Assembly: GCA_002269645.1 (NCBI GenBank)
Contig: NIVC01000085.1
Location: 372,001 to 436,000, forward strand
From: Macrostomum lignano
Taxonomy: Eukaryota
DNA length: 64,000 nucleotides
Reading direction: 5' to 3'
Part shown: one piece after another, positions 1 through 49,238 of the stretch
Position numbering within the stretch: the stretch's first letter is position 1
Layout: every line of letters starts with the position of its first letter
Position numbers and translations under genes: made by a program
The notes under the pieces: model-generated
The model's database searches: none
What the model was told of the DNA's origin: nothing
The model's input: only the letters and a program-made list of their open reading frames with translations

Positions 1-434
1 CTCCATCTCTCTTCCCTCGTGTCTCAGCTGCCGCCCCTTCACCCCTGCCCACTGGCAATGCACTTGCTATGCCCAGCACGCAGCCACAGTCAGCTCTCAT
101 TGTTTAACTCAGCAGAGCTCGCAGCATCTCACTGCTCCTGCATCTCTCACCCCGCTGAGCAGAGCAGCTGCCGGGCCCCCTGGCACCCAATCAGGCCTCA
201 AACACAGCCGCTGGGTCAGAGAAGAGAATCGGCCTCAGTCCATTTAAACAAATTTCTCTGCACAGGGAGAGCTCAGAGATTTCAGTCCGTGACAGCCGGA
301 CTTTTGCTGCTGCTGCTGAGCTGGCAGGCAAATTCGCTTGAAGAAGAGCAAAGCACTCAGTTTGAAGCCGTGTGGAACAGCTGCGGCAGACAGCAGATCG
401 GCAGAGAAGCGCTGCTAGGAGAAGCCGTGTAGCC

Positions 435-3400
435 ATGGCAACGGAGATGGAGCGGAAGCTGAGAGCGGCGCTGGAGGCTGGAGACAGCGAGGAGCTGCAG
501 CGACTGTGCGGTGAGGTCGGCAGCAACATCGAGCTGGAGGTGGGCGGGTTCGACGAGCAAGACTATCCCTATTTTACAGAGATTCTTGTAATGCCGCTGG
601 CCCATCACGTGGCCTGCAAGCCGGTGAGTTCGTCGTGCCTGGAGCTGCTGATTGACAGATTCGGACCCGACTGTCTGACACATGGACATGATAGGGGCAA
701 GACTCCAGTGCACTTTGCTGCTCAGCATCAGGACGAATCTTGGATGAAGCTGGTTAAAGAGAAGGGAGGCAGAGGCTGCTTGAGAATTGTCAGTGGATGG
801 AGAGAGACAGTCGCTCACTTTGCCGCTATGAACAGAAAAAGCAACTCTTGTCTGAAGTGGATGGTGAAGGAGCTCGGCAGCGACTGTCTCACAGTTCCTG
901 ACGAATTCGGTGACACGGCCGTCCATTTGGCCGCTCAGCATCAGGGCATCGAGTCGCTGGAGTGGATCAAGAGACAGATCGGAACTGGCTGCTTTCGGCT
1001 GAAGGGAGAAGGTGATAAACGAACATTTCACATTGCTGCTCAGAAGTCTGACAATTCAATGCTGAAGTGGCTGGTGAAGGAGCTCGGCAGCGACTGTCTC
1101 ACAGTTCCTGACGAATTCGGTGACACGGCCGTCTATTTGGCCGCTCAGCATCAGGGCATCGAGTCGCTGGAGTGGATCAAGAGACAGATCGGAACTGACT
1201 GCTTTCGGCTGAAGGGAGATGATGATAGAACAGCATTTCACTTTGCTGCTCAGAAGTCTGACAATTCAATGCTGAAGTTGCTGGTGAAGGAGCTCGGCAG
1301 TGACTGTCTCACAGTTCCTGACATAGACGATGACACAGCCGTCGATTTGGCCGCTCAGCATCAGGGCATCGAGTCGCTGGAGTGGATCAAGAGACAGATC
1401 GGAACTGACTGCTTTCGGCTGAAGGGATTGTGGGATAGAACAGCATTTCACTTTGCTGCTCAGAAGTCTGACAATTCAAATCTGAAGTGGCTGGTGAAGG
1501 AGCTCGGCAGCGACTGTCTCACAGTTCCTGACTATTGGGGTACCACGGCCGTCCATTGGGCCGCTGAGCATCAGGGAATCGAGTCGCTGGAGTGGATCAA
1601 GAGACAGATCGGAACTGACTGCTTTCGGCTGAAGGGAGATGATGATAGAACAGCATTTCACATTGCTGCTAAGAAGTCTGACAATTCAAATCTGAAGTGG
1701 CTGGTGAAGGAGCTCGGCAGCGACTGTCTCACAGTTCCTGACCAATGCGGTGACACGGCCGTCCATTTGGCCGCTCAGCATCAGGGCATCGAGTCGCTGG
1801 AGTGGATCAAGAGACAGATCGGAACTGACTGCTTTCGGCTGAAAGGAAGGCTCGATAGAACAGCATTTCACATTGCTGCTAAGAAGTCTGACAATTCAAA
1901 TCTGAAGTGGCTGGTGAAGGAGCTCGGCAGCGACTGTCTCACAGTTCCTGACCAATGCGGTGACACGGCCGTCCATTTGGCCGCTGTGCATCAGCCAGTC
2001 GACTCTCTTCAGTTCATTTTTGACCAAATCGGAGCCGAAATGCTCGGCTTGAAGAACAACGAGGGCAAAACACCGGCTGATATTGTTAAGAGTCGGCGGT
2101 TCTTCACAGACGAGTCAGCAAAGTGGACCTGGATTTCCTTAGCTGAGTGAGTCCTGACTGAAAACTGCTGCCTGACACTGAAAATACTGAAAATATTGTT
2201 TGGCGAAAATTCATTGCGCTTTGATGATCGGCGCCCTGAAACTCTCAGCAGCGCCGCAGTCAAGCGAGGGCGTCATGAATCTGTCAGTGCAGCTCCTCAT
2301 GGCGCCCCCAACCTCCTCATGGCGCCCCTAACCCCCTCATGGCGCCCCTAACCTCCTCATGGCGCCCCTAACCTCCCTATAGCGCCCCCAACCTTCTCAA
2401 TGCGCCTCCAATCTCCTCATGGCACCCTCAACCTCCCCATGGCGCCCCAACCTCCCACCCACATCTCAATCTGCAGGAGTTTTACACAAAGCATCATCGA
2501 GTTCAAGTGCCATCAAACTCTCCGAAGTTTCAAACTCTCCGATTTTAGTAGGAATGTACTTGGTGTGATGTTCAAAATATTGGCACTTGAATGATTTGAT
2601 CTCCCGATCGCGCCCCCAATGTCCATATAGCGCCACCCAAAGGTCAATCTGCAGGGGCTTCTTATTTACCTGAGGGTATGTACATGTACAAGATATACTT
2701 CGACAAGCCTCTGGCACTGGCGTGAGTTCATTCAGCCCACACAGCTATATCACACACAGCTACAGCACACACAGCTACAGCACACACAGCTACAGCACAC
2801 AGCTACAGCACACAGCTACAGCACACAGCTACAGCACACAGCTACAGCACACAGCTACAGCACACACAGCTACAGCACACACAGCTACAGCACACACAGC
2901 TACAGCACACACAGCTACAGCACACACAGCTACAGCACACAGCTACAGAAAACACAGCTACAGCACACACAGCTACAGCACACACAGCTACAGCACACAG
3001 CTACAGAAAACACAGCTACAGCACACACAGCTACAGCACACACAGCTACAGCACACAGCTACAGCACACAGCTACAGCACACAGCTACAGCACACACAGC
3101 TACAGCACACAGCTACAGCACACAGCTACAGCACACAGCTACAGCACACACAGCTACAGTACACACAGCTACAGCACACACAGCTACAGCACACACAGCT
3201 ACAGCACACAGCTACAGCACACAGCTACAGCACACACAGCTACAGCATGCAAATTATCCCTCATTGCTTCAATTCGCATTCCCTCAGACCCGAAGGCTGG
3301 GACTTCGTCCCAGCGTTCCTGAAGCGCTGGGACGCAGTCCGCCTCATCGGCCGTGGAGGCTTCGGCGAAGTCCACGAAGTTCGAACTGACACGGGCATCA

Positions 3401-4235
3401 CGTGCGCTGCCAAGACTCTCAGACTGCCTGTGCAGCTCGGTGATGAGCTGCCCTCTGTGAGCACAAGGATCCACAGAGCTGTCGAGAGCGAGAGAAACCT
3501 GTGCCGACTGCGACATCCCAACATCGTCATGTTCTTGGACATCGCTCAGCCGGAGCCCGCCACAGTCGTTGTGTTCATGGAGCTGCTGGACGGCCGAAGC
3601 TTGGAGAGGTTTATCGACAACAAGCCGCTGGACGAGCTGACGATTCGAGACTTCAGCGAGCAGGTGAGCATTGTGCATCCTTGATGCTCCTGTTCCATGT
3701 TCCCATGAATGATGACTGCTCACTGACCGACCTCTCGCAGATCTGCCGCGCACTGCTCTACCTGCACAGCCGGCAGCCGCCCGTGATCCACAGAGACATC
3801 AACTGCTCGAACATGATTGTTCGTGCTGACAACACGCGAATCAAGCTGATCGGCTTCGGCCTGTCAATCAAGCTGGACCAGTCAGTCAGCCACATTTCAG
3901 CCTCCACTCCGACTCCCAAAGGCACTCTGAACTTCATGGCGCCAGAGCTGCTCGGAGCGGGAGAGTCGGCCAGCGTGCAGTACAGACGAGAGTCGGACAT
4001 CTGGGCGTTCGGCTGCTCGGTCTTCCAGATGGCCTCCGGCGCGAGGCCGTTCGCAAACGCCAAAAGCATGTTAGAAATGGCCCAGCTGATCGACAGGAGG
4101 GGCGCCCCCGCCCTGCCGGACGGCCGGTCCGCAGAGCTGAGGGATTTCTACAGCCGCTGCACCGCCAAAGACCGCAGGAGGAGAAGATCCGCACAGGAGC
4201 TGCTGGGGCACGAGTTCCTGAGCAAAAACCTCTGA
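435..4235 (+). CDS. Gene A1: ankyrin-repeat (70-aa double-unit array) + STE/MAP3K-like kinase, predicted pseudokinase; join(435..2146,3288..3663,3741..4235), 860 aa
   Basis: ATG at 435; donor GA|GTGAGT at 2147 (phase 2) matches acceptor CTCAG|A at 3288 (phase 2); CAG|GTGAGC 3664 and GCAG|ATC 3741 are phase 0; summed length 2583 nt is divisible by 3. Ankyrin motifs [17 protein letters not shown]; kinase motifs GRGGFG, CAAK, HRDINCSN, KLIGFG (DFG altered), GTLNFMAPE, DIWAFG. Confidence 0.88.
851..1995 (+). repeat. Coding tandem array: 5 full + 1 partial 210-bp ankyrin double-repeat units
   Basis: Units start at 851, 1061, 1271, 1481, 1691, 1901; framework almost invariant. Confidence 0.95.
2750..3247. 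repeat. Intronic simple repeat (CACAGCTACAG-type)
   Basis: Direct reading; lies in intron 1 of A1 and generates the spurious low-complexity N-terminus of ORF 2722..3684. Confidence 0.95.
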
Positions 4236-4759
4236 CTCTCAGTGCTGTCTCAACACTGTCGGGAGATTTCGGAGCTTTATGTTCGGCGTAAATCGGATGA
4301 GAACAAAATTTCTTTTTCTAAAATTAGCCTACACTTCTATCCTTTTAAACTCTTCCTTATTTTATCCCCATGGCGCTTTAATTGCTATGAAAGCATGTTC
4401 CTTTTTAGAGCGTAGCTGGCCATTCGAAAAGCTGAGAAACTGCAAATTTCTTGAGTAGACAGTGAGAAGACAAAAGAGGAGGGCACCAACCAGCACCCAG
4501 CACTCACACAGCAACAAAGCAACCGAAATCATTTCCATTCTTCATCACAGCTCATGATATCCATTCTCCATCAGATGCATCGAGTTTGTCATATCGGTAA
4601 TTTATCAAAGCTATCAGGCTACTCCAGCCTGAACGTGAGCTGTCACTTGGACTGCATGGATATTAGGCCACATGGGCATTACTTGTGCTCAATCCGATTT
4701 GCTAGCATGGGCACCGGCAGGGCTTTTGATGGAGCTCTAATTTTTCTCCATTGGAATTG

Positions 4760-5058
4760 ATGGAGAATAGAGAAGCTGCGCTGGGATCTGATGGAGAATA
4801 GAAAAGCTGAGCTGGGATCTGATGGAGAATAGAGAAGCTGAGCTGGGATCTGATGGAGAATAGAGAAGCTGAGCTGGGATCTGATGGAGAATAGAGAAGC
4901 TGAGCTGGGATCTGATGGAGAATGGAGAAGCTGAGCTGGGATCTGATGGAGAATTTAGAAGCTGAGCTGGGATCTGATGGAGAATAGAGAAGCTGAGCTG
5001 GGATCTGATGGAGAATAGAGAAGCTGAGCTGGGATCTGATGGAGAATAGAGAAGCTGG
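4760..5058. repeat. 31-bp minisatellite (CTGGGATCTGATGGAGAATAGAGAAGCTGAG)
   Basis: About 9 units; same unit recurs at 15443-15658. Confidence 0.92.
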
Positions 5059-6782
5059 TCGAGTCGATAATTCTCAGCAGTCAGAGCCTCTGCAGTGAGG
5101 AGGCTGTCAGCTCTGCGAGTAAGTGATGCAGAATGAGGTGTCAGTCCCTAGCAGGAATTTGAATTTATTAATTTGCCTAGACTTCTCACCGGTTTCAGAG
5201 ATGTACTTCTAAACATTTTTTCGACATTCTCTGTTCGAGCACCAGCCGGTCCCAGTCCCAGACCCGCCCTATAAAATGTGTTTCATTTTTCTGCCACATT
5301 CTGTCTACATGACACAAATTCGCAATCACACTGGCCTCCAAAGGCCCAATTATGAGTGCCAGACTCGCATCTGAAAACTCGCAGGCAGCGAATTTTACAG
5401 TCATTGAGCACAGGCGCAATGCAAAGCTGTGAATGGTTTGAGCGGGGCAGGGTTAGCGCTCAAGCAGTTTGTCTCTGTGCCACCAACCCCCAGCCCAAAG
5501 CCTTTGAGTCCTCTTTTAACACGCGTTCGCATGCCGCTGTCTCGGCCCTCAAACCTCAGCTTCGCCATTGTCCTCTGGGCATTGAGCTCGGCTGGTCTGG
5601 AGCTGCTTGGACAGCTGGGGTCGGGGTGAGTACAGGCCTCATTCTTTTCGCTTCGATGTGCTCACAGCCCCAACCCCAGCCCTCAACTCATGGCTCAGAT
5701 GAAGGAGAGACAGGAGGAGATGCAGAGGCCGCACACAGCAGCCCAGCTGCACACAGCGGTGCCTCATCAGCTCTGCCCCATTGTCCAAAACCCCTGCACA
5801 AACCTCACCTGCTGTGCACCTGCCTCTACTTGCCGAATGAGCTCAGCATCTCTGCTGCATCAGTTTGAGCTCTGACAGATGAAGAGCGAATGGAGGCTGG
5901 GAGAGGCAGGGAGTGGCTGCGAATTTGCTGACGCAGCTGCTAAGGACAGGTGGGGCGAGCGGAGCGCAGAGAACCTCGAAATGAGCGGCCCAGCAACTGA
6001 GCTGAGTGAGAAATTCTCAGAGACTTGCAGTTGCTTAAGCCTTCTGCAAGGGAAGTAGATGGAGAAGGGGGTGGGTGAGAGGGAGATAGGGGAGAGGGAG
6101 ATGGGTGAGAGGGAGATAGGGGAGAGGAAGATGGGTGAGAAGGATATATGTGAGAAACACAATACACACAAACACAAAGTTTTGTTTACCCGATTGACCT
6201 TTTTGTTTAGCTTATTTGTTTTCTATTCGATTACTCTTCTTGTTGTCTAATTACATCTTTTGTTTATTCAACTGCGTGTTTTGTTTATTTGACTGCCTTG
6301 TTTGTTTAACTGATTAGATTTCGAATTTTGAATTATCGTTTTGTCTACTGATCACCTGCTGCTACCCGATGCCCGGATCAGTTATCAATCACAGTTTTGT
6401 TTATTCGTCTGCGATTCGGAATTCAAATTTTATTTATTTGACTGCCGGGTTTGTTTTACCGGTTGCTCCTTTCAATTAGTGAGACATTTTTGAGCTGACT
6501 CGAGTGCCATTCCAGTTTCAAGCTGATCAATGTTGATTTTGAAACTCTGGCACAAAGCCAATCACAATTTCCCCAATCTGCTCAGACTGCTCAATGCCTA
6601 CTCCAGATTTCTGTTGCCGAGAATTTTTCACATTTTTCTGCCACCGGTTTGGCGCTTTTTCCGGCTCTGATTTTTGTATTTGATTTTTGGACTGACTTTT
6701 TATTAGCAACTGTTGGAGCAGGAAGTCCAGCGCTTACTCAAGAGTTCTCAGTTAAATATACAGCCACCGCTTGGCTTGCCGT

Positions 6783-7195
6783 GAACCGCTGTGTCCTGAC
6801 TTGCCGTGACCCGCTGTGTCCTGACTTGCCGTGACCCGCTGTGTCCTGACTTGCCGTGACCCGCTGTGTCCTGACTTGCCGTGACCCGCTGTGTCCTGAC
6901 TTGCCGTGACCCGCTGTGTCCTGACTTGCCGTGACCCGCTGTGTCCTGACTTGCCGTGACCCGCTGTGTCCTGACTTGCCGTGACCCGCTGTGTCCTGAC
7001 TTGCCGTGACCCGCTGTGTCCTGACTTGCCGTGACCCGCTGTGTCCTGACTTGCCGTGACCCGCTGTGTCCTGACTTGCCGTGACCCGCTGTGTCCTGAC
7101 TTGCCGTGACCCGCTGTGTCCTGACTTGCCGTGACCCGCTGTGTCCTGACTTGTCGTGACCCGCTGTGTCCTGACTTGCCGTGACCCGCTGTGAC
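6783..7195. repeat. 25-bp minisatellite (CCCGCTGTGTCCTGACTTGCCGTGA)
   Basis: Tandem array; paralogous array at 23905-24277. Confidence 0.95.
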
Positions 7196-7879
7196 CCATT
7201 TCATATTTCAATATTTCGCAGCGTCATTTCTGAGCCTCACTCAGTGCAATGCACACAACAGTGCGGGAAGGCAGAGCTGATGAAGCAGGCATGCAGTGAA
7301 GCTGGCCATTGTTTTCAAGTGGCTTGTAGAGTGTCATGAGGTCTGAGGCTGCCTCACGGCTCGGCCCCTCACGCAGTGAGCAAAGAGATGTGCAGAGCCC
7401 TTAACTGCACAGACGCTGCAGAGCTGCTCCAGTTGCCATGGCAATGGGGGAGACTCGAGCTCGGAGAGTCTGTGGACAGCTGAGCAATGTGCTCACCTGG
7501 AGGCTGGGTGGTGCGGCTTGTTGCTTCATCTGCACAAAAGTGTGTTCAAACGAGCATCAGCCATTCTGTGCATCTCATTTGAACAGCAGATGCTGCATCA
7601 ATGATGCTGGCAGACACTTGAGTCTGTGCTCACTCAGTGCACTGTGAAATGTACATAAATAAGTGTTTGCAGTGGCTTCGCATTGCATTGAACTGAGACA
7701 ATGGCGGGGCATGAGGGCTGCTCAGCCACCTCAGCGGGGCGCCGCTGTTTTGAGCAGAAAAATGAAAATAAAACCGCATTTCTGCTTTCATTTAGACCGA
7801 ATTTGGTGGGAAAACACTTTTGAGACTACTCTAGATAGCAGAGTATGGTTTTAAACTGAATGCACACTTTTGCTGTTAG

Positions 7880-8153
7880 ACATGGTGTCCTGTTAGACAT
7901 GGGAGTCTCCTGTTAGACATGGGAGCCTCCTGTTAGACATGGGAGCCTCCTGTTAGACATGGGAGTCTCCTGTTAGACATTGGAGTCTCCTGTTAGACAT
8001 GGGAGTCTCCTGTTAGACATGGGAGTCTCCTGTTAGACATGGGAGTCTCCTGTTAGACATGGGAGTCTCCTGTTAGACATGGGAGTCTCCTGTTAGACAT
8101 GGGAGTCTCCTGTTAGACATGGGAGTCTCCTGTTAGACATGGGAGTCTCCTGT
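7880..8153. repeat. 20-bp minisatellite (TGTTAGACATGGGAGTCTCC)
   Basis: Tandem array; paralogue at 24950-25850 is interrupted by a solo LTR. Confidence 0.95.
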
Positions 8154-8599
8154 TTGATATGACAGTCTTCTTTACTCTTCTCTCTCTGCCCTCTCATATC
8201 CAGCAAAGTTATCATAATTTTCTAGTAGGTTACATGCAGGCGTACATCGGAGAATTATTAATTCATGCATATGTCATGTCGCTTTGTCCCCATCTTTGTG
8301 AGATTCTGGTGAGGGTAAGATCAGGGCAAAAGGGCGTAGAATAGAAGGTAAAAAGGGGTTTTTAGGTTTCATGCTATTGTTAATTTTGATCGATGAATTC
8401 ATGTACTGTTTTTGACCGATTCTTCATAGCTACCCTACATGTAAGAGTTATGATCATGCTTGTCTATGATCTACATGTACTGAGTATGACCGCAATCGCC
8501 TATGACCTGTACTATGACCGTAATTGTCTATGACCTACTGAGAACGACCGTAATTGTCTATGACCTACTGAGAACGACCGTAATTGTCTATGACAGTTT

Positions 8600-15600: not shown

Positions 15601-15892
15601 GGGATCTGATGGAGAATAGAAAAGCTGAGCTGGGATCTGATGGAGAATAGAGAAGCTGGCGTGAGGGGGAGGATGAGAGGGGGATGGGTGAGAAGGGGAT
15701 GGGTGAGAGGGGGATGGGTGAGAAGGGGATGGGTGAGAGGGGGATGGGTAAGAGGGGATGGGTGAGAGGGGGATGGGTGAGAGGGGGATGGTGAGAGGGG
15801 GATGGTGAGAGGGGGATGGGTTAGAAAGGGATGGGTGGGAGGGCTGTGTAAAAGGGAGATTGTGAGAGAAACCCAATAGAGACAATCAGATG

Positions 15893-19528: not shown

Positions 19529-22500
19529 ATGGCAACACAGATGGAGCGGAAGCTGAGAGCGGCGCTGGAGGCTGGAGACAGCGAGGAGCTGCAGCGACTG
19601 TGCGGTGAGGTCGGCAGCAACATCGAGCTGGAGGTGGGCGGCTTCGACAAGCAAGACTTTCCCTTTAGAGAGATTCTTAAAATGCCGCTGGCCCATCACG
19701 TGGCCTGCAAGCCGGTGAGCTCGTCGTGCCTGGAGCTGCTGATTGACAGATTCGGACCCGACTGTCTGACACATGGAAATGATAGGGGCAAGACTCCAGT
19801 GCACTTGGCTGCCCAGCATCAGGACCAGTCTTGGATGAAGCTGGTTAAAGAGAAGGGAGGCAGAGGCTGCTTGAGAACTGTCGACAGATGGGAACAGACA
19901 GTCGCTCACTTTGCCGCTATGAACAGAAAAAGCAACTCTTGTCTGAAGTGGCTGGTGAAGGAGCTCGGCAGCGACTGTCTCACAGTTCCTGACGGATGGG
20001 GTGACACGGCCGTCCATTTGGCCGCTCAGCATCAGGGCATCGAGTCGCTGGAGTGGATCAAGAGACAGATCGGAACTGACTGCTTTCGGCTGAAGAGACG
20101 GTGGGAAAGAACAGCATTTTACTTCGCTGCTCAGAAGTCTGACAATTCAAATCTGAAGTGGCTGGTGAAGGAGCTCGGCAGCGACTGTCTCACAGTTCCT
20201 GACTCTAGAGGTGACACGGCCGTCCATTTTGCCGCTCTGCATCAGGGCATCGAGTTGCTGGAGTGGATCAAGAGACAGATCGGAACTGACTGCTTTCGGC
20301 TGAAGGGAGATGATGATAGAACAGCATTTCACTTTGCTGCTGAGAAGTCTGACAATTCAAATCTGAAGTGGCTGGTGAAGGAGCTCGGCAGCGACTGTCT
20401 CGCAGTTCCTGACAAATTCGGTCACACAGCCGTCCATTTGGCCGCTGAGCATCAGGGCATCGAGTCGCTGGAGTGGATCAAGAGACAGATCGGAACTGAC
20501 TTCTTTCGGATGAAGGGAGATGATGATAGAACAGCATTTCACTTTGCTGCTCAGAAGTCTGACAATTCAAATCTGAAGTGGCTGGTGAAGAAGCTCGGCA
20601 GCGACTGTCTCACAGTTCCTGACAGACTCGGTGACACGGCCGTCCATTTGGCCGCTCGGCGTCAGCCAGTCGACTCTCTTCAGTTCTTTTTTGACCAAAT
20701 CGGAGCCGAAATGTTCAGCTTGAAGAACAACAAGGGCGAAACACCGGCTGATATTGTTGAGAGTCGCTGGTGCTACACAGACCAGTCAGCAAAGCGGGCC
20801 TGGATTTCCTCCACGCAGCGGCGGCTCGAAGCCTCTCGGCCTTCCGCTGGCAGCTCAGCGCCGACTGCCGCCTCAGCTGGGTGAGTCCTGACTGAGAACT
20901 GCTGCCTGACACTGAAAATACTGAAAATATTGTTTGGCAAAAATTCATTGCGCTTTGATGATCGGCGCCCTGAAATTCTCAGCAGCGCCGCAGTCAAGCG
21001 AGGGCGTCATGAATCTGTCAGTGCAGCTCCTCATGGCGCTCCCAACCTCCCCATGGCGCCTCCAATCTCCTCATGGCGCCCCGACCTTCTCATGGCGCCC
21101 CCAGTCTCCTAATGGGCCCCAACCCCCCACCCATAACTCAATCTGGATCAAAGCATCAGCGAGTTCAAGTGCCATCAAACTCTCCGATTTTAGTAGGAAT
21201 GTACTTGGTGTGATGTTCAAAATATTGCCACTTGAATGATTTGAGAGCCTCCAATCTCTTCGTGGCGCCGCAATCTCCCGATCGCGCCATATATAGCGCC
21301 ACAGGTGACGCAGAAGGGTGGTGACGCAGAAGGGTGGTGACACAGAAGGATGGTGACGCAGAAGGGTGGTGACGCAGAAGGGTGGTGACGCAGAAGGGTG
21401 GTGACGCAGAAGGGTGGTGACGCAGAAAGCTGGTGACGCAGAAGGGTGGTGACGCAGAAGGGTGGTGACGCAGAAGGGTGGTGACGCAGAAGGGTGGTGA
21501 CGCAGAAGGCTGGTGACGCAGAAGGCTGAGTGACTACAAAGTACTCAGAAAGCCCCAAGCAACACAAAATTCATCAATTCCTTCATTTCATGCTTCAGCG
21601 CCAAGAAGCAGCTGGACCCCAGCTTCACCGACTGGGACTTCATCCTGCAGGACAACAAGAAGCAGCTCATCGGCCGTGGCGGATTCGGTGAGGTGTACAA
21701 GGCCCTCACAGACCGCAACCAGACGGTGGCTGTCAAGGTGCTGCCCCTGAGCGGCACCGGCCAATCGGGGAAGCTGCAGAAAGCCGTCGAGTTGGAGAAG
21801 CGGGGAGTTGAGATCCTCAAGCGACTCTCGCATCCCAACATTCTGCAGTTCCTCAAGTGCGAGCAGAAGTCGGACGGGCTGTACATCTTCACCGAGCTGG
21901 TCTCGGGTCACAGCCTCTTTGAGCTGATGCAGCGTCAGAACAAGCCGTTCAAGGAGTCCGGGGTCAGGGACTTCTCCAGACAGGTGCGTCTCTGAGTTCT
22001 CTGGCATTGCCTGGCATGGGTGGGATGTGGGACTAGTGTGGGATCAGTGTTGGATCAGTGTGAGATCGGTGTGGGATCAGTGTGGGATCAGTGTGGGATC
22101 AGTGTGGGATCAGTGTGGGATCAGTGTGGGATCGGTGTGTGATCAGTGTGAGATCAGTGTGGGATCAGTGTGAGATCGGTGTGGGATCAGTGTGGGATCA
22201 GTGTGGGATCAGTGTGGGATCAGTGTGGGATCAGTGTGGGATCAGTGTAGGATCAGTGTGGGATCGGTGTGGGATCAGTGTGGGATCAGTGTGGGATCAG
22301 TGTGGGATCAGTGTAGGATCAGTGTGGGATCAGTGTGGGATCAGTGTAGGATCAGTGTGGGATCAGTGTAGGATCAGTATGGGATCGGTGTGGGATCAGT
22401 GTGGGATCAGTGTGGGATCAGTGTGGGATCAGTGTAGGATCAGTGTGGGATCAGTGTGGGATCAGTGTGGGATCAGTGTGGGATCAGTGTGGGATCAGTG

Positions 22501-23238
22501 TGGGATCGGTGTGGGATCAGTGTGGGATCAGTGTGGGATCAGTGTGGGATCAGTGTAGGATCAGTGTGGGATCAGTGTGGGATTAGTTTGGGATCAGTGT
22601 GTGATCAGTGCGGGATCAGTGTGGGATCAGTGTGAGATCGGTGTGGGATCAGTGTGGGATCAGTGTGGGATCGGCGTGGGATCAGTGTGGGATCAGTGTG
22701 GGTGGGAGCAGGTATGTTGTCTCATGACTACTCAAAACTGCCCCACCTGCAGATCTGCTCAGGCCTGAACTTCCTGCACTGCCAGCCGGAGGGCGCCATC
22801 TTGCACCGTGACATCAAGAGCTCCAACGTGATGCTCACCAGCAAAGGCGTCATCAAGCTGATCGACTTCGGCCTCGCCAAGGAGATCGTCGGCACCTGCG
22901 GCCTGAGCACAGGCGTCGATCCCAAAGGCACCCCCTACTTCATGGCGCCCGAGCTGTTCATGGGCGAGGGCGATTCGATTCCGTACTCAGCCAAGACCGA
23001 CGTGTGGGCCTTCGGCTGCACCGTGTATGAGCTGACGGCCATGCAGCCTCCTGACGCGAACGTTCAGCAGTTCAGGATCGCCGTGCTGAGGTGCGGAGGG
23101 CGGGCGATGCCTCGGATTGCGGACGGGTTCTCAGCCGGCCTGAAAGACTTCTACCTCAGGTGCGTAGACTATGACCCGAGGAAGCGAGCGGACACCGCGG
23201 AGCTGCTGCGGCACAGCTTCCTGAGTGCCTCATCGTGA
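19529..23238 (+). CDS. Gene A2: ankyrin-repeat array + canonical STE11/MAP3K-like kinase; join(19529..20880,21599..21983,22753..23238), 740 aa
   Basis: GG|GTGAGT donor (phase 2) fits TTCAG|C acceptor; CAG|GTGCGT and GCAG|ATC are phase 0; 2223 nt divisible by 3. Motifs [37 protein letters not shown] all intact; 3 full + 1 partial 210-bp units. Confidence 0.9.
21305..21530. repeat. Intronic 16-bp minisatellite (GGTGACGCAGAAGGGT)
   Basis: In intron 1 of A2. Confidence 0.92.
22030..22700. repeat. Intronic 11-bp minisatellite (TGTGGGATCAG)
   Basis: Fills the intra-kinase intron of A2. Confidence 0.95.
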
Positions 23239-38450: not shown

Positions 38451-38511
38451 ACGCAAAGAATCTCCAGCGAGAGAGAGAGAGTCTCCAAAGAATCACAGCC
38501 TAGTCATAGAT

Positions 38512-41500
38512 CTAGTCCAGCTTAGGCTGCTTAATAAAATGTCCGTCATCAAGAGACAGATTCATCAGGCCTCGTTTGTCCAACTTTCTACTCGCCAGAA
38601 ACTGGTGCTTCATCAGCTCATCCGCTGGCTTGCGCTCGATGCGATTTCGAGCGGTGCACTGGCTGTAGAAATCCTTCAGCTCAACAGAGCAACCGTCACG
38701 AATAGCGGGGGCTCCGCTTCTTTCGAGTCGCACAGCAACTTGAAAGATTGTTGGAACGTCAGCGAAGGGTCGGGAGCCGGTGGCCATCTGGAAGACCGAG
38801 CAGCCGAACGCCCAGATGTCCGACTCTCTGCTGTACTGCGGTCTGTCAGCCTCACCAGCTCCAAGCAGCTCTGGTGCCATGAAGTTCAAAGTGCCTTCAG
38901 GTTTTTGAGTTGTGGCCGAGATGTGGCTGACCGACTGCTCCAGCTTGATTGACAGGCCGAAGTCGATCAGCTTGATGCGCGTGTTGTCGGTAAGGACAAT
39001 GATGTTGGAGCAGTTGATGTCTCTGTGGATCACGGGCGGCCGCCGGCTGTGCAGGTAGAGCAGCGCGCTGCAGATCTGCAAGCGGTCGGTCGACAGTTTT
39101 GAATCTAAAAAAGTCAACTCAATCCAGGCTTAAAATCCAGAAATTCTCACCTGCTTGCTGAAGGAACGAACGGCTGCCTCATCCAGCGGCTTGTTGTCGA
39201 TAAACCTCTCCAAGCTGCGCCCGTCCAGCAGCTCCATGAACACAACGACTGTGGCGGGCTCCGGCTGAGCCATGTGCAAGAACCTGACGATGTTGGGATG
39301 CCGCAGTCGGCACAGGTTCCTCTCGCTCTCAATAGCGCCTTCGATTTTCTTTCTAATAGAATCCAGCTGGTCCCCGAGGTGCACAGGCAGTTTGAGAGTC
39401 TTGGCGGCGCACCTGATGCCCGTATCTGTCAGAACTTCGTGGACTTCGCCGAAACCTCCCCGACCAATAAGTCGACCGGTTTCCCAGTCCTCTAAGAATG
39501 GCGGATGGTCGTCCTCTCTGAAAATCCGCAGTTAAAATGGCGAATTCCTGCATAATTATACTTAAAGTCGTCCATGAGTCGCCCAAGAACCACTTTGAAG
39601 CGTTTTATTGCCTGCGACTTTGAAGCGACTCTGGGGCCGTAAAGTGGTAAGGCGTGCTGTAGAGTCACTGAGTTCTGTTTGAAGCGCATTTGCGTCGCTT
39701 GATGAATCAGAGTCGCATCTCAAGCGAAAGTTAAGCGCCAACACAACGATTCTTGGACGACTCTTTCACGATTCTTTTACGATTCTACAACTGACGTGAC
39801 GCGCTTGTGACGCAACCTTTGAGTCGCTAAAAAGTCACAGGAGTTGCTCAAGAGTCGCTAGAGTCACTAGAGAGTTGTTTGGAATGACTCTTTTACGATT
39901 CTACAACTGACGTGACGCGCTTGTGACGCAACCTTTGAGTCGCTAAAAAGTCACAGGAGTTGCTCAAGAGTCGCTAGAGTCACTAGAGAGTTGTTTGGAA
40001 TGACTCTTTAGCAATTCTTGCCATGGTAAATTTTTTAACGGGATGCATGGCTCTACGAAAAATCCGTAGCAAGGTGTAGAATGTGGAGCACTTCAACTGT
40101 GAATGCCCCGCCTTTACTCAGTACATTTTCAGGCCCCCGAGAATCTTTGCCAGCTTGTCCGCTACCTAAGGGCTACCGGGCGAGCGACCATCCACCTTTC
40201 TGGACTCTCCGGAGGGGGACCGCGCTGCGGACACCGGCACCACCGGATCTCCCGGCTTCGACCCCTTAGGGTATGTGCATATTTTTGGCTTTAATAGTCA
40301 GATTGACTTACGGCAGTTCAAGGGGCTCATCAAAGTAGACTTTGGTTTCGCACCTGAAACAATGATTAATAGATATAATAGAGTGAAAGTACTCAGATTA
40401 ATTATAATAATAATTTATTAAGAGTACACCTTGCACAAATTAGCAGATCTGAAGGCTGCGTACGGCTGCTCAGACCAAGGACTGGGGGTCGCCACACACA
40501 CCCTCAATTACCCCAGCTAATGCTGGCACCCATTTTACAGCTGGGTGAGCTGAAGCAATGCAGAGTTAAGTGTCTTGCTCAAGGAAGGACACAAATTGTT
40601 CTGAGTGCGTCGAGAATCGAACCAGGGATCTTTTAGTCGTAAGTGCGACGCTTTAACTCAGTTGTCGACAATTTTACAGAGATGCATTACAGATCCATAC
40701 AGATGCATCCGTTATTTTACGTTAAGGGCGAGATGAAGAGTCTTGATGATTTCTGCGGGCCAGGAGAGAGTGGAAAGGAGATGGAATGGATGAGAGAGAA
40801 GAAAGAGGATATGAGAGATGAAAAAATAAAGAAGAATTCAGAGGCGAGATGAGAGGAGAGATGAGAAGAGAGAAGAAGGGTGAGAAGATGAGAGGAGAGA
40901 GGAGATGAGATAAGATGAGAGGGGAGAGGAGATGAGATGAGAGGAGAGAGGTGAGGAGACGAGAGGAGAGAGGAGATGAGAGGAGAGAGGAGATGAGATA
41001 AGAGAGGAGATAAGATAAGATGAGAGAAGAGAGGAAATGAGATGAGAGGAGACAGGAGATAAGATTAGAGGAGAGAGATTCGATGAGAGGAGATGAGATG
41101 AGATGAGAGAGGAGATGAGATAAGCGGGGAGATGAGATAAGATGAGAGAAGAGAGGAGATGAGATGAGAGGAGACAAGAGATAAGATTAGAGGAGAGAGA
41201 TTAGATGAGAGGAGAGAGATGAGATGAGAGGAGACAGGAGATAAGATGAGAGGAGAGAGATGAGATGAGAGGAGAGAGGAGAGAAGAGATAAGATGAGAG
41301 GAGAGAGATGAGATGAGAGGAGAGAGGAGATAAGATGAGAGGAGAGAGATAAGATGAGAGTAGAGAGATGAGATGAGAGGAGAGAACTTAGAAGAGACAC
41401 AAACCTTGAGCAGGCCACATTGCTATTGTAAAGTTTCAAAGGACCCGAAGGCCAGATAGAGAGGCATTGCGGGCCGCTTGTGGCTCGCGGGTCGGAGGTT

Positions 41501-42062
41501 GTGGACCCCTGCTCTAAGCGCTAAGGCTACAAGCCATACTACTCAAAAACACAGAGTAAATGCATCTGCAAGAACCTCACCCACGCAGCAGCGCTTCCAG
41601 TTCAGCTTTGCCATTCTCCCTGGCCAAGTCTCGAGCCGTCCTGCCAAGCTGGTCCTCCAGGCTCCAGTCCGAGCCGGAGTCCAACAGAACCCGACAGACA
41701 GCGGTGGCGGCTGACGGGGACGCTGAGATGGTGGCCCTCATCAACGGCGAGACTGATTGCTCATCCTGGGCATTGACGGAAGCTCCAGAGTGCAGCAGGG
41801 CGGAGGCTGCGACAGAGTTGCCGCTCCAGGCAGCGTGATGCAGGCAGCTCTCGGACCACATGTCAGCACAGGTGGGATCTGCCAACTGCAGCAGCTGTTC
41901 CCACAAATATTCGTCACTGCAGTTGCTGTTGCCAGCTGCCCACATCAGCGCGGTGCGGCCGTATTTGTCCGGCAAGTCATAGCCGTCTTGGGTGGCCAGT
42001 TGTCGCAAGCCGGCCGAATTACCAGACGTGGCCAGCTTCAGTTGCTTTCGATTGGCTTTTTC
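38512..42062 (-). pseudogene. Gene B: 5'-truncated duplicate of gene D (ankyrin exon + two kinase exons), reading frame intact; complement join(41581..42062,39151..39517,38512..39075)
   Basis: Near-identical to D exons 3-5; 1413 nt in frame; no upstream exons, which are replaced by the junction at 42063-42168. Confidence 0.75.
39560..40030. repeat. Intronic element with 116-bp internal tandem repeat (2 units here, 5 units at 54986-55565)
   Basis: Unit starts at 39779 and 39895; at 54986, 55102, 55218, 55334, 55450. Confidence 0.85.
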
Positions 42063-42366
42063 CTGCAGCACCAGGATTTAGCACCAAGGGGCTTTAGCAC
42101 CAAGAGGCGCCAGCACCAAGGGGATTTAGCACCAAGGGGTTTTAGCACCAAGGGGCGCCAGCACCAAGTTAGCTCGGACCTTCAAGCAATCAACGTGCAC
42201 TTTAAACCGAATAACTTGCCTCTAGAATGATTTTTTGACATCAAACTTTCGATGTAGGGTTGGCGACTTGGGACACAGGCTTTAGAAACGCGAAAAAACG
42301 CTATTGCGAATCTCGAAGTCACGCAAGCAAAACAGACAAAACCGCTCTCCGAAATCCACTAAGCAG

Positions 42367-43530: not shown

Positions 43531-43740
43531 TTTTCAGTTAGAAACGGTTGATCTCGTCAAAGTTAGTGCTCGTGCTCAAATTTTTCCTAATACCCTTCGA
43601 GAATTCAAATTGGAACAATTGAAAGCGACAATTTATTGTGTAAAAAACTCAAAAAACTGACTGAAATGATAATTTGTCAAAGTTGAGTTCGAAAGTTGCA
43701 TGTAAAAAACTCACACACAGTGAGAGTGAAATTTGGGAAC

Positions 43741-45885: not shown

Positions 45886-48800
45886 TCAGGAAATGCTGGC
45901 AGCTCTGTGTAGTCTATTCGTCATCAGCCGCATGCGCGTTATTTCACCGCCCGTCAGGAACTGGTGCCTCATCAGCTCCAGGGCCGACTGTCTCTTACTG
46001 CGGTTATGAGTCGTGCAGCTGCGGTAGAAATCCTCCAACTCTTTGGAGCAACCAGGTGGAAGTTTTGGACAACCGTTATTCTTTATCAGCTGGGCTATTG
46101 TTAATAAATTAGATGCGCTATGAAACGGCCTCTGACGGGTGGCCATCTGGTAGACTGAGCAGCCGAACGCCCAGATGTCCGACTCTCTGCTGTACTGAGG
46201 CGAGGTGTCAGCCTCGCCAGCTCCGAGCAGCTCTGGAGCCATGAAGTTATGAGTGCCTCTGGGTGTCTGAGTGCTAGCTAAGTTGTGACTGACTGACAGT
46301 TTCAGTTCGATTGAAAGGCCGAAGTCGATCAGCTTAATTCTCGTGCCTTCGGAAAGCACCATGATGTTGGAGCAGTTGATGTCTCTGTGGATCACGGGCG
46401 GCCGTCGGCTGTGCATGTAGAGCAGCGCGCTGCAGATCTGCAAGATGTTCCATTGATTACTGTAGTTTGAACTGGCCCTCTTATTTAAACGAGTCCTGTA
46501 AAACCTGTGTAAGCGTGTGCATGAGTGCGTTCCTGCGTACCGTATTGGCGCGCTTGAGTTGTATGTGATCAGGAGTCAGCGGAACGCGCTGGTTGTGGGA
46601 ACATGTCGCCGAAGGCGTGATCAAAAGCTCTCCAGTCAATATTATAATTTTTTGAAAGCACAGGAAACTTATTCACCTGCTCGCTAAAGTCTCGAATTTT
46701 GTTCTCAGGCATTGGAGCGCCGTTAATAAATGTTTCCAAGGTCTTTCCCTCCAGCAGCTCCATGAACAGAACGATTGTGGCAGGCTCAGTTTGAGCGATG
46801 TGCAAGAATCTGACAATGTTTCTGTGCTGCAGTCGGCACAGGTTCCTCTCGCTCTTGACCGCTTTGTCGATCTTTGTACGGTCTTGAGCATATTGATCAG
46901 CGGTCAATTGACCGACGGGCAGTTTAATAATTTTCGCAACACACTCGATGCCTTTGTCGGTAAGGACTTTGTAAACTTCGCCAGAGCCTCCTCTGCCGAT
47001 GAGGTCACCTACGTCCCAGCGCTCCATGAACGGCGGGTCTTCGTGTCTGTGTTTAGTTGAATTCGAATAGCGCACAATAATAAGCTTTTATGGAATGGAA
47101 CTATATGAAACAGTCCATTGCCGCTAACCTTGCTCTGTAACATGTCCCTGTACTGTAGCTGTCCCTGTACTGTAGCTGTCCCTGTACTGTAGCTGTCCCT
47201 GTACTGTAGCTGTCCCTGTACTGTAGCTGTCCCTGTACTGTAGCTGTCCCTGTACTGTAGCTGTCCCTGTACTGTAGCTGTCCCTGTACTGTAGCTGTTC
47301 CTGTACTGTAGCTGTCCCTGTACTGTAGCTGTCCCTGTACTGTAGCTGTCCCTGTACTGTAGCTGTCCCTGTACTGTAGCTGTCCCTGTACTGTAGCTGT
47401 CCCTGTACTGTAGCTGTCCCTGTACTGTAGCTGTTCCTGTAGCCTATACATGTGCACTATTTTACCCTCAGCTCAAGGTGTTTAGGGGAACTTACGGCGG
47501 CTTCAAAGGCTCCTCATAGAACTTCTTGCCCTTGTACCTACAAACAGGCAATACGGTGGTCGAAGTGACGCTTTGGTAGGTTAAAAATGTGCATAAAGTG
47601 TTTGAGCCAGAAAAACTGAATTAATTTAATTCTGAACTACAAGGTTCCAAGAAAACTCACTTTTGAAGCAGTTCAACAAGATCTGGGTTCCCATCGGACC
47701 TGATCAAATCCAGAGCCGTCTTGCTGCAGCTGTCCTTCAGACTCCAATCGGACCCAGCGTCCATCAGGATCTGACTGACTTGGACGGCGGTGTCTTTGGG
47801 CGCATAAAGAGCCGCCTGCATGAGCGGTGTGGACTTGCTTCTGTCTTCCCTGGCGTTGGCGGAGGCTCCAGCAGCCAGCAGGATGGAGGCTGCCACGGAA
47901 TTTCCACTGCTGGCTGACCAGTGCAGGCAGGTGCGAGATAAAGTTTCTGCACAGGTGGGGTCGCCAAGCTGCACCAGAACCTCCCACAGAGCCTCGTCAT
48001 TGCAGTTGCTGCTCTGAGCAGCTCTGATCAAGGCGGTGAAGCCGGAACTGTCGGGCAGGTCGCAGTTGGCTCGAGTTACCTTCTGCCGGAGACGAGTCCA
48101 GTCGCCCGCTCTGATCAACTTCTCCAGTTCTCCTTGTTCCGCCAGTTCCTACAGAAAGATACCGTGGACTATTCGATAACAATCTCACAAGTTGCATAAT
48201 AGATACGAAAGTTGCTACTTGCCTTTTCTGTTAGACCAGTGATGGAGTCATAGGCATCAACAGTCAGCCGCATCTCTCTGCAACAGAATAATTGACATTA
48301 TATTCGTAAAGTTTGGTTGCAAAACACAAATAAACAATTCCTCCATCACCTTTTGATATAGTTGGCCAGCTCTGAGTGGCCATTGATCCTTGCCAGATCA
48401 AACGCCGTCCGACCCTCGACATCTTTGAGTCCGAGCAGGCGCTCTCTCACAGAGTTGCTGGGCTTGCCGGCCTGAGGCTTGTAGAACTGCCGCTGCCTCA
48501 GCAGGTGCAGCAGGTGCTTGGCGCATCTCCAACTGCCGGTCCGCGCCGCCTCCATCAGCGGAGTGGCGCCCCGCCGGTTCTGCAGCCACTTCGCATCGAA
48601 CGACAGCAGCATCAGCAGCCGCAGGTGGTCCCGACGGGCTGCCAGGTGCGCGGCCGTGTCGCCCGAGTCATCAATAATCGATTTTTGATTCGCGCCCAGC
48701 TCGAACAAGTACATGACGCACTTCTCAGCTTGAATGGGCGTCTCCGGAGCGTCGGCAACCAGCATGAGGACGGTTCGGTTAGCGGCATCAGGCTTGCTCA

Positions 48801-49238
48801 CCAGCTGGCTCGTTGCCAGCCGCTGCACCTGAGCAAAGTCACCTTGGATGACGGACTGGGCGAGAGTCTCCAGGGCAGCTGTTGAGACTTCGGTGCCTGC
48901 CTGATGATGTGCTGGGAGATCCTGCGGCGTGAAAATTTAAAGTCTCGTCAATAAATTTTTTATTGTAGACAATGTAGACAATCGAGCCCATGGCTACGGG
49001 CCAGATGAAAGTGGAGAGGAGAGGGAATAGAAGATGACAGATGACAGACAAGCGAAGAGGGGAGAGAAGAGTTGAAAAGAGACAAGAGTATTGAGCAGGC
49101 CTGATAGTTAATGTATAAAGTTTCAAAGGATCCGAGGTCCGCATAGAGAGGCTTCGGGGGCCCCTGCTTTACAGGCAAGTCATTTGATTTCAAACTCACT
49201 TCACTGTCTGCAGCAGAGGTCGACTCATCTCGAGACAT
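45886..49238 (-). CDS. Gene C: two ankyrin blocks + STE-like kinase; complement join(49200..49238,48350..48921,48223..48277,47661..48148,46677..47046,45886..46437), 691 aa
   Basis: All splice phases (0,2,0,2,0) match, 2076 nt divisible by 3; GDTAAHLAA, GATPLMEAA, STPLMQAA; GRGGSG, CVAK, HRDINCSN, DFG, GTHNFMAPE. First 39-nt exon tentative; micro-exon uses a GC donor. Confidence 0.85.
47146..47437. repeat. Intronic 17-bp minisatellite (TGTCCCTGTACTGTAGC)
   Basis: In the ankyrin-kinase intron of C. Confidence 0.93.

What the first reader, a model, noticed from the sequence alone, without database searches (positions are those of the whole stretch)
2636..6300. Kinase module swap: A1 is a chimera of A2-type ankyrins and a B/D-type kinase
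Seen: A1 and A2 align from ~218/19312 to ~2636/21302 (inside intron 1) and again from ~6300/23420 to ~8560/26280, but the intervening kinases differ. The A1 kinase (HEVRTDTGITCAAK, ESERNLCRLRHPNIV, HRDINCSN) matches the minus-strand B/D kinases 35-50 kb away, while A2 has [12 protein letters not shown]. All five ankyrin-to-kinase introns are phase 2 and all five kinases have a phase-0 intron at xFSxQ|IC. Inference: sensor and effector cassettes are exchanged by intronic recombination.
Basis: partly seen in the sequence, partly recalled or inferred. Interest (0 to 1): 0.78.

Follow-up and report, generated by a model that had tools for sequence, protein, structure and literature searches.

The report
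Flatworm ankyrin-kinase gene with swapped kinase
In this stretch of the flatworm Macrostomum lignano genome, one ankyrin-repeat kinase gene really did have its kinase half replaced by about 3.5 kb from a different gene subfamily; this is a clean but ordinary case of exon shuffling in a fast-duplicating gene family.

Summary
The window is Macrostomum lignano DNA.

- **Flanks.** A1 (435-4235) and A2 (19529-23238) share about 93% identical flanks.
- **Kinases.** They are only about 40% identical in protein. A1's kinase belongs to the type also carried by B, C and D.

The chimera reading holds, with four corrections.

1. **Direction of the swap.** A-type ankyrins normally carry the A2-type (VAVK) kinase, in at least 9 close paralogues and in 5 distant relatives. 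A1 is therefore the derived form.
2. **Donor.** It was not B or D (22% coding divergence). It was a P0159-like gene from elsewhere in the genome (6-9%).
3. **Junctions.** The 5' junction (2666-2679) lies in the recipient's phase-2 intron, exactly at the acceptor of the donor's 42-nt micro-exon. A dead copy of that micro-exon survives at 2680-2721. The 3' junction (5906-6179) lies beyond the gene, next to a minisatellite. Neither junction shows extended homology.
4. **Age.** The event is old. The same structure occurs at a second locus (L001, with an annotated spliced product) and in a third protein (P0218).

A1 itself looks decayed: DFG has become GFG, it has a 63-nt deletion, and no matching annotated product is on record. 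Caspase-bearing relatives use the same phase-2 joint. This is a new member of a known kind, of moderate interest.

The parts
435..2146 (+). A1 exon 1: A-type ankyrin repeats, including 5.4 copies of a 210-bp (70-aa) unit at 851-1994. It ends in a phase-2 donor (GA|GTGAGT). It lacks 63 nt that A2, L001 and P0218 have at the exon end.
   Evidence: the deletion shows
2147..2665 (+). Recipient-derived (A-type) part of intron 1. It is alignable to A2 and to the V-type loci L002 and L005 up to 2663-2665.
2666..2679 (+). 5' junction: about 14 nt of unassigned filler (ttacctgagggtat) between recipient and donor homology. The donor's acceptor AG is replaced by AT here. L001 shares this state.
2680..2721 (+). 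Dead copy of the donor family's 42-nt micro-exon (YDGKIYFDEPLAL-type). It is still an open frame and its GT donor follows it, but it has no AG acceptor.
   Evidence: (intact micro-exons in L006 and L010)
2722..3287 (+). Donor-derived 3' part of intron 1, with a 15-nt minisatellite (CAGCACACACAGCTA)n at 2733-3247. Donor-type loci L006, L007 and L008 share it.
3288..3663 (+). A1 exon 2: N-lobe of the H-type STE-group kinase ([22 protein letters not shown]). It ends at FSEQ| in phase 0.
3741..4235 (+). A1 exon 3: kinase C-lobe (HRDINCSN, and IGFGLS where relatives have IDFGLS). The C-terminal ...EFLSKNL* is shared only with the other chimeras.
4236..5905 (+). Donor-derived 3' flank carried in with the kinase. 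It includes a 31-nt minisatellite at 4758-5057 and a stretch (5252-5905) homologous to the spacer downstream of the P0159 gene in L006.
5906..6179 (+). 3' junction zone of unresolved origin. It is present in L001 at 97% and includes a GGGAGA-rich low-complexity array at 6049-6157.
6180..8594 (+). Recipient-type 3' flank resumes. It starts in the (TTTGTTTATCCGATTGCCC)n minisatellite that follows the stop codon of V-type genes by about 70 nt. It is collinear with A2 (from 23303), L001, L002, L004 and L005.
19529..23238 (+). A2: the unswapped tandem paralogue. Exons are 19529-20880, 21599-21983 and 22753-23238. It pairs A-type ankyrins with the V-type kinase ([15 protein letters not shown]) and is identical to BOX15_Mlig028886g1.
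38512..42074 (-). B: B-type ankyrin exon (42074-41583), micro-exon (40353-40312) and H-type kinase exons (39517-39151 and 39075-38512). No N-terminal exon was found.
45952..48894 (-). C: B-type ankyrin exons (48894-48404 and 48148-47660) and a divergent H-type kinase (47051-46668 and 46440-45952).
53800..58666 (-). D: a tandem duplicate of B with an N-terminal exon. Ankyrin exons are at 58666-58184 and 57249-56767, and kinase exons at 54728-54354 and 54285-53800.

Best explanation
A1 descends from a single DNA-level exon-shuffling event in the Macrostomum lignano lineage.

**The recipient.** It was an 'A-type' gene: an A-type ankyrin exon, a phase-2 intron, then two exons of a V-type STE kinase.

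**What was replaced.** The recipient lost everything from the middle of intron 1 to about 70 nt past its stop codon. In its place came about 3.5 kb copied from a 'B-type' gene of the P0159 kind. The copied piece runs from that gene's 42-nt micro-exon, through its minisatellite-bearing intron and both H-type kinase exons, into most of its downstream spacer.

**The junctions.** Both are non-homologous: filler at the 5' side and a minisatellite edge at the 3' side. The likely route is therefore break repair or replication template switching, not homologous crossover (inferred).

**Why the product reads through.** Every ankyrin-to-effector intron in this superfamily is phase 2, so the new exon 2 reads in frame. 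The donor's micro-exon lost its AG acceptor and is skipped.

**Afterwards.** The chimera spread as part of a roughly 9-kb duplication unit to at least three loci. Its ankyrin exon and flanks have since been scrambled with neighbouring V-type copies by gene conversion.

**State of A1.** The A1 copy is probably catalytically dead or decaying.
For: **Organism and models.**
- The best protein hits are all M. lignano.
- The A2 model equals an annotated protein exactly.

**Direction of the swap.**
- A-type ankyrins at 69-86% identity carry V kinases in P0121-P0123, P0125-P0128, P0130 and P0132.
- Distant A-like ankyrins (P0137, P0141, P0143, P0148, P0039) also carry V kinases.
- H kinases normally sit behind B-type ankyrins (P0159-P0164, P0172, P0191, P0196).

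**Breakpoints.**
- V-type loci L002-L005 are collinear with A2 throughout. They match A1 only up to about 2665 and again from about 6180.
- Donor-type loci L006-L008 match A1 from 2689/2733 to 4221-4246 at about 92%. L006 also matches 4758-5057 and 5252-5905.
- The alignment across the 5' junction shows the donor micro-exon remnant without its AG. Intact versions are seen in L006 and L010.
- The 3' junction sits at the recipient's minisatellite.

**Single origin and reality of the structure.**
- L001, on another contig, is collinear with A1 over 1-9405, including 2835-7196 at 95.4%.
- The annotated product of L001, P0124, splices the ankyrin exon to the H-kinase exon at the homologous sites.
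- P0218 is a third chimera.
- Only the chimeras share the C-terminal ...EFL(R/S)KNL*.
- P0001, a separate database model, joins A1's own ankyrin tail to A1's own kinase, including the GFG.

**Phase rule.**

**Mosaic flanks.**
- Quartet site counts for A1, A2, L001 and L002 are 23 : 4 : 7 in favour of A1+A2.
- None of those 23 sites lies in 6320-6770, next to the junction.
- The capping repeat shows a short-tract mosaic.

**Decay of A1.**
- A1 has 7 unique replacements at columns that are invariant in the other H kinases, including DFG D to G. Five sampled relatives have 0-2.
- It has a 63-nt deletion.
- No matching product is on record.
Against: - In the kinase-only protein tree the three chimeras form a clade with just 31% bootstrap support.
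- In kinase coding sequence A1, L001 and donor L006a are about equidistant (6.7, 6.6 and 5.6%). Single origin therefore rests on the shared junctions, 3' flank and C-terminus, not on the kinase tree.
- No sampled donor locus matches A1 over all of 4236-6180, so the true donor was not recovered, and 5906-6179 is unexplained.
- In the distal flanks A1 groups with A2 rather than with the other chimera L001. This needs a further process, either gene conversion or secondary transfer of the cassette.
- The repair mechanism is inferred from junction anatomy alone.
- Expression and splicing of A1 itself were not shown.
Confidence: 0.8

Rival explanations
1. The chimera arose once, but A1 did not inherit it vertically. 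On this view a V-type tandem twin of A2 later received the H-kinase cassette from an L001-like chimera by homologous gene conversion, primed in the shared A-type flanks. Cassettes would then move between family members after the founding event.
For: - In the distal flanks A1 groups with its neighbour A2: 7 of 11 informative sites in 218-850, 5 of 7 in 7197-7870 and 11 of 11 in 8200-8594.
- Next to the 3' junction (6320-6770) no site supports A1+A2, and A1 is 1.8% from L001 and L002 against 4.9% from A2.
- The swapped core is 95.4% identical between A1 and L001.
- Short-tract mosaicism in the ankyrin exon shows that conversion is active in the family.
Against: - The same pattern arises if an ancestral chimera-plus-V-type pair was duplicated and each pair's distal flanks were then homogenised.
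- L001 and L002 lie on different contigs, so their adjacency could not be tested.
- There are few informative sites.
- In 6320-6770 A2 simply has many private changes, 14 singletons.
Confidence: 0.25
2. The swap went the other way. On this view A-type ankyrin plus H kinase is the original form, and A2 acquired a V-type kinase.
For: A1 and A2 taken alone are symmetric, and nothing inside the window polarises the event.
Against: - V kinases accompany A-type ankyrins in at least 9 close clusters and in all 5 distant A-like relatives sampled.
- A1 carries donor-specific relics that only make sense as imports from a B-type gene: the dead micro-exon, the donor's intron minisatellite and the donor's downstream spacer.
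- V-type loci L002-L005 are collinear with A2 across the whole gene.
Confidence: 0.03
3. Assembly artefact: a false join inside one of the many minisatellites fused an A-type 5' half to a B-type 3' half.
For: - Minisatellite arrays flank both junction zones: 2293-2455, 2733-3247, 6049-6157 and the array beginning near 6180.
Against: - The junctions lie in unique sequence, not inside arrays.
- An independent contig (L001) has the same junctions, with its own substitutions.
- Its annotated product spans the join.
- P0218 and P0001 are further independent models with the same architecture.
- An artefact would also need a second false join to return to the A-type 3' flank.
Confidence: 0.02
4. The kinase half arrived by retroposition of an H-kinase mRNA.
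For: None beyond the general frequency of retrogene chimeras in animals (background knowledge).
Against: The imported segment keeps the phase-0 intron (3664-3740), part of the upstream intron with its minisatellite, and 1.7 kb of non-transcribed-looking spacer. No poly(A) tract is seen at its end.
Confidence: 0.01

Closest known systems
Classical exon shuffling by illegitimate recombination in phase-compatible introns (Gilbert and Patthy model); young chimeric genes formed from DNA-level duplicates
   Same: - A whole domain-encoding block was moved at the DNA level.
- The upstream breakpoint is in an intron.
- Donor and recipient introns share the same phase (2), so the frame is kept.
- Both parental gene types still exist.
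   Different: - This is a 3'-terminal replacement, so only one intron phase matters and the second breakpoint is intergenic.
- The import replaced an already homologous, 40%-identical domain, so no new architecture was created.
- The donor breakpoint destroyed a micro-exon acceptor.
[quoted passage not shown]
   Same: - Ankyrins related to both lineages seen here are fused to caspase domains in M. lignano (P0136, P0138, P0175, P0199).
- Both loci examined join through a phase-2 intron, and L010 keeps the same 42-nt micro-exon.
- The kinase and caspase genes therefore look like one modular superfamily.
   Different: - The genes in this window carry STE-group kinases, not caspases.
- The paper describes ANK-caspases as a clade and reports one M. 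lignano caspase with a kinase-like pro-domain, but not an ankyrin-kinase family or its shuffling.
STE-group protein kinases (MAP3K5/ASK1, STK25, SLK, PAK)
   Same: - The best solved-structure matches for both kinase types are MAP3K5, STK25/MST and SLK, at E = 1e-28 to 1e-36.
- Both hit Pfam Pkinase over its full length.
   Different: - No solved STE relative retrieved here was noted to carry N-terminal ankyrins.
- H-type kinases have HRDINCSN: the catalytic-loop lysine is replaced by Asn.
- A1 also has GFG in place of DFG.
- Identity to any non-Macrostomum protein is at most about 35%.
Concerted evolution and interlocus gene conversion in tandem or segmentally duplicated families
   Same: - The flanks and the ankyrin exon show a mosaic, non-tree-like pattern of shared sites among A1, A2, L001 and L002.
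- The number of 210-bp ankyrin units varies, 5.4 against 3.4.
   Different: Conversion cannot explain the founding event, because no homology exists at the original junctions.

Membership tests
Exon shuffling through intronic recombination | The upstream breakpoint lies inside an intron of the recipient | tested here: met
   Recipient homology ends at 2665, which is 519 nt into intron 1 (2147-3287).
Exon shuffling through intronic recombination | Donor and recipient introns have the same phase, so the reading frame is kept | tested here: met
   The intron is phase 2 in A1, A2, B, C, D, L001, L006, L010 and L011. The A1 model reads through 860 codons.
Exon shuffling through intronic recombination | Both parental gene types can be identified and have different partners | tested here: met
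   Recipient type: A2 and L002-L005. Donor type: L006-L008.
Exon shuffling through intronic recombination | The chimeric mRNA is actually made | tested here: inconclusive
   The paralogue P0124 (L001) is annotated with the expected splice. Neither the spliced 860-aa A1 product nor the unspliced 571-aa product is on record. No RNA data could be queried.
Homologous (non-allelic) gene conversion as the founding event | Sequence homology between donor and recipient flanks both ends of the converted tract | tested here: not met
   Donor and recipient sequences are unrelated on the outer sides of both junctions. There are about 14 nt of filler at the 5' junction and 274 nt unassigned at the 3' junction.
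Retrogene-derived chimera | The imported part lacks introns and ends in poly(A) | tested here: not met
   Intron 3664-3740 and part of the upstream intron are retained, and no poly(A) is present.
Catalytically competent eukaryotic protein kinase (STE group) | Beta-3 lysine, alpha-C glutamate, HRD aspartate, catalytic-loop Lys and Asn, and DFG aspartate | tested here: not met
   A1 has the beta-3 lysine (CAAK), the glutamate (ESE) and HRD...N. However, its catalytic loop is HRDINCSN, with no lysine, as in all H-type kinases. Its DFG is GFG, which is unique to A1 among the 17 H kinases compared. A2 has [12 protein letters not shown] and DFG.
Platyhelminth ANK-caspase superfamily | An ankyrin pro-domain fused to a caspase p20 domain | tested here: not met
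   The window genes carry Pkinase, not Peptidase_C14. They are relatives through the ankyrin part only.

The most novel reading that the evidence does not exclude
The ankyrin genes of M. lignano may form one combinatorial superfamily. Two ankyrin lineages are joined, always through a phase-2 'hinge' intron, to interchangeable C-terminal modules: a V-type STE kinase, an H-type STE kinase or a caspase. Minisatellite-rich introns and spacers could act as break-prone sites that repeatedly generate new ankyrin-by-output pairings. Gene conversion would then move those pairings between paralogues. On this reading the family would be a fast-diversifying recognition and cell-death or signalling repertoire, analogous in logic to expanded innate-immune receptor families. 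The A1 event would be one resolved instance of that process.
Probability: 0.2. Interest if true: 0.7.

Novelty: new member of a known kind. Interest (0 to 1): 0.42.

Why it matters
**A well-resolved example.** This is a natural exon-shuffling event in an animal in which several things can all be read from sequence:
- the recipient type and the donor type;
- the 5' junction to about 14 nt, and the 3' junction to a 274-nt zone;
- a relic of the donor (a disabled micro-exon);
- the later spread of the chimera.

Such cases are useful for teaching and for testing ideas on how phase-compatible introns and repeat-rich DNA promote domain swapping.

**A family not yet described.** I found no description of a large, species-specific ankyrin-STE-kinase family in M. 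lignano. It shares its ankyrin parts and its splice architecture with the ANK-caspases already noted in flatworms.

**Practical value.** It warns annotators that neighbouring near-identical paralogues here can carry unrelated kinase halves, and that A1 is probably a pseudokinase or a decaying copy.

Tried and rejected
- **A1 product look-ups.** I looked up the spliced 860-aa A1 product and the unspliced 571-aa ankyrin-only product. The exact-sequence look-ups found nothing. Expression of A1 therefore stays untested.
- **B and D as donors.** I rejected them because coding divergence is 22%, against 6.6-8.8% for L006-L008, and because their 3' flanks do not match A1.
- **Synteny beyond the duplicated unit.** I looked for matches between the window and L001 or L002 to decide whether L001 and L002 form a pair like A1 and A2. 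Only minisatellites matched.
- **Kinase protein tree.** I hoped it would show the chimeras as a strong clade. Bootstrap support was only 31%, so I did not lean on it.
- **dN/dS.** Values of 0.35-0.75 for all pairs do not single out A1. The case for A1's decay rests on replacements at invariant sites instead.
- **Transposon signature.** I looked around the 3.5-kb insert. There are no obvious target-site duplications at the junctions. ORF 5356-5868 has no Pfam hit. ARAGORN finds no tRNA-like gene in the window.
- **Literature.** Two searches found no paper on ankyrin-kinase shuffling in this species.

Full report
[quoted passage not shown] My model of the second gene is identical over 740 residues to BOX15_Mlig028886g1. 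That protein lies on contig NIVC01000085.1 of assembly GCA_002269645.1, which places the window at about 372001-436000 of that contig.

**The observation.**
  - A1 and A2 align at 93% over 218-2139 / 19312-20810.
  - They align at 75% over 2137-2599 / 20871-21244.
  - They align at 92% over 6317-8171 / 23429-25241.
  - They align at 87% over 8017-8578 / 25711-26281.
  - They do not align in between.
- A1 3327-4165 matches the minus-strand genes B and D at 80%.
- Gene models with GT-AG introns give open reading frames.
  - A1: 435-2146 / 3288-3663 / 3741-4235, 860 aa.
  - A2: 19529-20880 / 21599-21983 / 22753-23238, 740 aa.
- Both proteins have ankyrin repeats followed by a full Pkinase domain.
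- By tblastn the A1 kinase is 67-76% identical to B and D, 59-66% to C and about 40% to A2.
- All five genes have a phase-2 intron between the ankyrin and kinase parts and a phase-0 intron at FSxQ|IC.
- B and D also have a 42-nt micro-exon inside the 'ankyrin-to-kinase intron' (40353-40312 in B). Some protein models include it and others skip it.

**Which copy is the recombinant.** A search with the A2 ankyrin exon finds many M. lignano proteins with the same A-type ankyrins at 69-86% identity.
- Nine clusters carry the V-type kinase ([15 protein letters not shown]): P0121-P0123, P0125-P0128, P0130 and P0132.
- Five more distant relatives with A-like ankyrins also carry it: P0137, P0141, P0143, P0148 and P0039.
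- A-type ankyrins with an H-type kinase (HEVRTDTG, HRDINCSN) occur only in A1, P0124, the P0218/P0003/P0008 cluster and the garbled P0133.
- H-type kinases normally follow a different, B-type ankyrin N-terminus: P0159-P0164, P0172, P0191 and P0196.
- A-type plus V is therefore the ancestral pairing, and A1 is the derived form.

**Breakpoints and donor.** I fetched DNA for four V-type loci (L002-L005), one chimeric locus (L001, encoding P0124) and three B-type H-kinase loci (L006-L008).
- The V-type loci are collinear with A2 through the kinase. They match A1 only up to about 2665 and again from about 6180.
- The B-type loci match A1 from 2689/2733 to 4221-4246 at about 92%, including the 15-nt minisatellite in the intron.
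- L006 also matches A1 4758-5057 and 5252-5905, which is the spacer downstream of its kinase.
- In kinase coding sequence A1 differs by 6.6-8.8% from L006a, L007 and L008. It differs by 22% from B and D and by 28% from C. The window's own B and D are therefore cousins of the donor, not the donor.

**The 5' junction.** Recipient sequence runs to 2665 and is followed by about 14 unassigned bases. At 2680-2721 there is a recognisable copy of the donor family's 42-nt micro-exon, still followed by GTGAGT. Its acceptor reads TAT where intact donors have TAG. L001 shares exactly this state. The donor breakpoint thus fell at the micro-exon's acceptor and disabled it. Splicing then goes from the ankyrin exon directly to the kinase exon, as in the annotated P0124.

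**The 3' junction.** Donor homology ends at 5905. In L006 that point is about 290 nt before the next B-type gene's start codon. Recipient homology resumes at 6180, at the start of the (TTTGTTTATCCGATTGCCC)n array that follows V-type stop codons by about 70 nt. The 274 nt between them are unassigned. Neither junction has extended homology, so I infer illegitimate repair or template switching. The retained introns exclude retroposition.

**Reality and age of the chimera.**
- L001 lies on another contig and is collinear with A1 from 1 to 9405. The match includes 2835-7196 at 95.4% and both junctions, and L001 has its own substitutions.
- P0218 is a third chimeric protein, and P0001 is a separate model linking A1's own ankyrin tail to A1's own kinase.
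- Only the chimeras share the C-terminal ...EFL(R/S)KNL*.
- These points make misassembly very unlikely and place the event before the split of at least three loci.
- The kinase-only protein tree groups the chimeras, but with just 31% bootstrap support.
- A1, L001 and L006a are about equidistant in coding sequence. The case for a single origin therefore rests on the junctions and the shared flank.

**After the swap.** The flanks are not tree-like.
- Among A1, A2, L001 and L002, 23 informative sites group A1 with its V-type neighbour A2. Four sites group the two chimeras, and seven group A1 with L002.
- None of the 23 A1+A2 sites lies in 6320-6770, next to the 3' junction.
- The capping ankyrin repeat is a short-tract mosaic.
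- The 210-bp ankyrin unit is present 5.4 times in A1 and 3.4 times in A2.
- Gene conversion and unequal exchange are therefore active in the family.
- I cannot tell whether A1 inherited the cassette and later had its distal flanks homogenised with A2, or whether it received the cassette secondarily from another chimera through the shared flanks.

**State of A1.**
- A1 has seven replacements at positions that are invariant in the other H kinases compared. One turns DFG into GFG. Five sampled relatives have 0-2 such replacements.
- It has a private 63-nt in-frame deletion at the end of exon 1.
- It has a four-residue insertion at the start of the kinase exon.
- Neither its spliced nor its unspliced product is on record.
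- dN/dS does not single it out, being 0.35-0.75 for all pairs.
- I consider A1 probably inactive as a kinase and possibly decaying.

**Wider family.** Both kinase types are STE-group; the best solved matches are MAP3K5/ASK1 and STK25/SLK.
- Ankyrins related to both lineages are also fused to caspases: P0136, P0138, P0175 and P0199.
- In both caspase loci examined the join is again a phase-2 intron, and L010 keeps the 42-nt micro-exon.
- ANK-caspases of flatworms are described in PMC11463336.
- I found no description of the ankyrin-kinase family or of this swap.
- The shared phase-2 joint makes repeated module exchange plausible. Only one event is resolved here.

**Verdict.** The chimera interpretation is right in substance but needs correcting on the donor, the 3' breakpoint, the age of the event and the 'sensor/effector' wording. 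This is a new, well-resolved member of a known kind (exon shuffling in a lineage-specific duplicated family) and is of moderate interest.

Noticed in passing
window 2145-2150, 20879-20884, 41584-41579 (-), 47663-47658 (-), 56770-56765 (-) approx.: Every ankyrin exon ends xx|GTGAG in phase 2, so the donor site itself creates an in-frame TGA. Retaining the intron would give an ankyrin-only protein that ends at the same residue. Many ankyrin-only M. lignano models appear in the B-type search (P0165-P0190).
   Followed up: partly
window 40353-40312 (-) in B; about 55902 (-) in D; L006 about 12163-12204; L010 6262-6303: A conserved 42-nt phase-2 micro-exon ((Y/C)xxK(I/V/K)YF(D/E)E...) lies between the B-type ankyrins and the kinase or caspase. 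Some protein models include it (P0159, P0191, P0186) and others skip it (P0196, P0049). This suggests alternative splicing.
   Followed up: partly
window 42067-43940 vs 34215-36314; 36800-38452 vs 50465-52109: B has no detectable N-terminal exon. The B/D duplication ends at about 42076/57260, and the sequence upstream of B is a 92-97% copy of 34215-36314. B may therefore be a 5'-truncated duplicate of D.
   Followed up: partly
window 27967-28461 (-): An ORF of 164 aa between A2 and B has a full-length universal stress protein domain (Usp, E = 1.5e-22).
   Followed up: no
whole window (for example 2733-3247, 6775-7193, 22026-22702, 51368-53641, 60145-61934): The window is very rich in minisatellites: 42 TRF rows with score at least 200 in 64 kb (a few rows describe the same array). 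Units are 11-116 nt and arrays reach 2.3 kb. Almost every intron and spacer of these genes has its own array, and A2's phase-0 intron is nearly all (TGTGGGATCAG)x61.
   Followed up: partly
window 4758-5057 and 6049-6157 vs 15441-15658 and 15663-15843 / 17411-17803: The 31-nt array and the GGGAGA-rich 15-nt-type array inside A1's imported 3' flank recur side by side upstream of A2. Either these arrays belong to a dispersed repeat, or a remnant of a donor-type spacer lies between A1 and A2.
   Followed up: no
window about 40680-40560 (-), inside B's long intron: By eye this stretch resembles a tRNA-derived SINE (it contains ...ggttcgattc...). ARAGORN reports no tRNA anywhere in the window, so this is unverified.
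   Followed up: partly
L006 19549-20468 and about 17022 onward: The donor-type locus L006 holds a second B-type H-kinase gene about 3 kb downstream of the first. B-type genes therefore also occur in head-to-tail arrays elsewhere in the genome.
   Followed up: no
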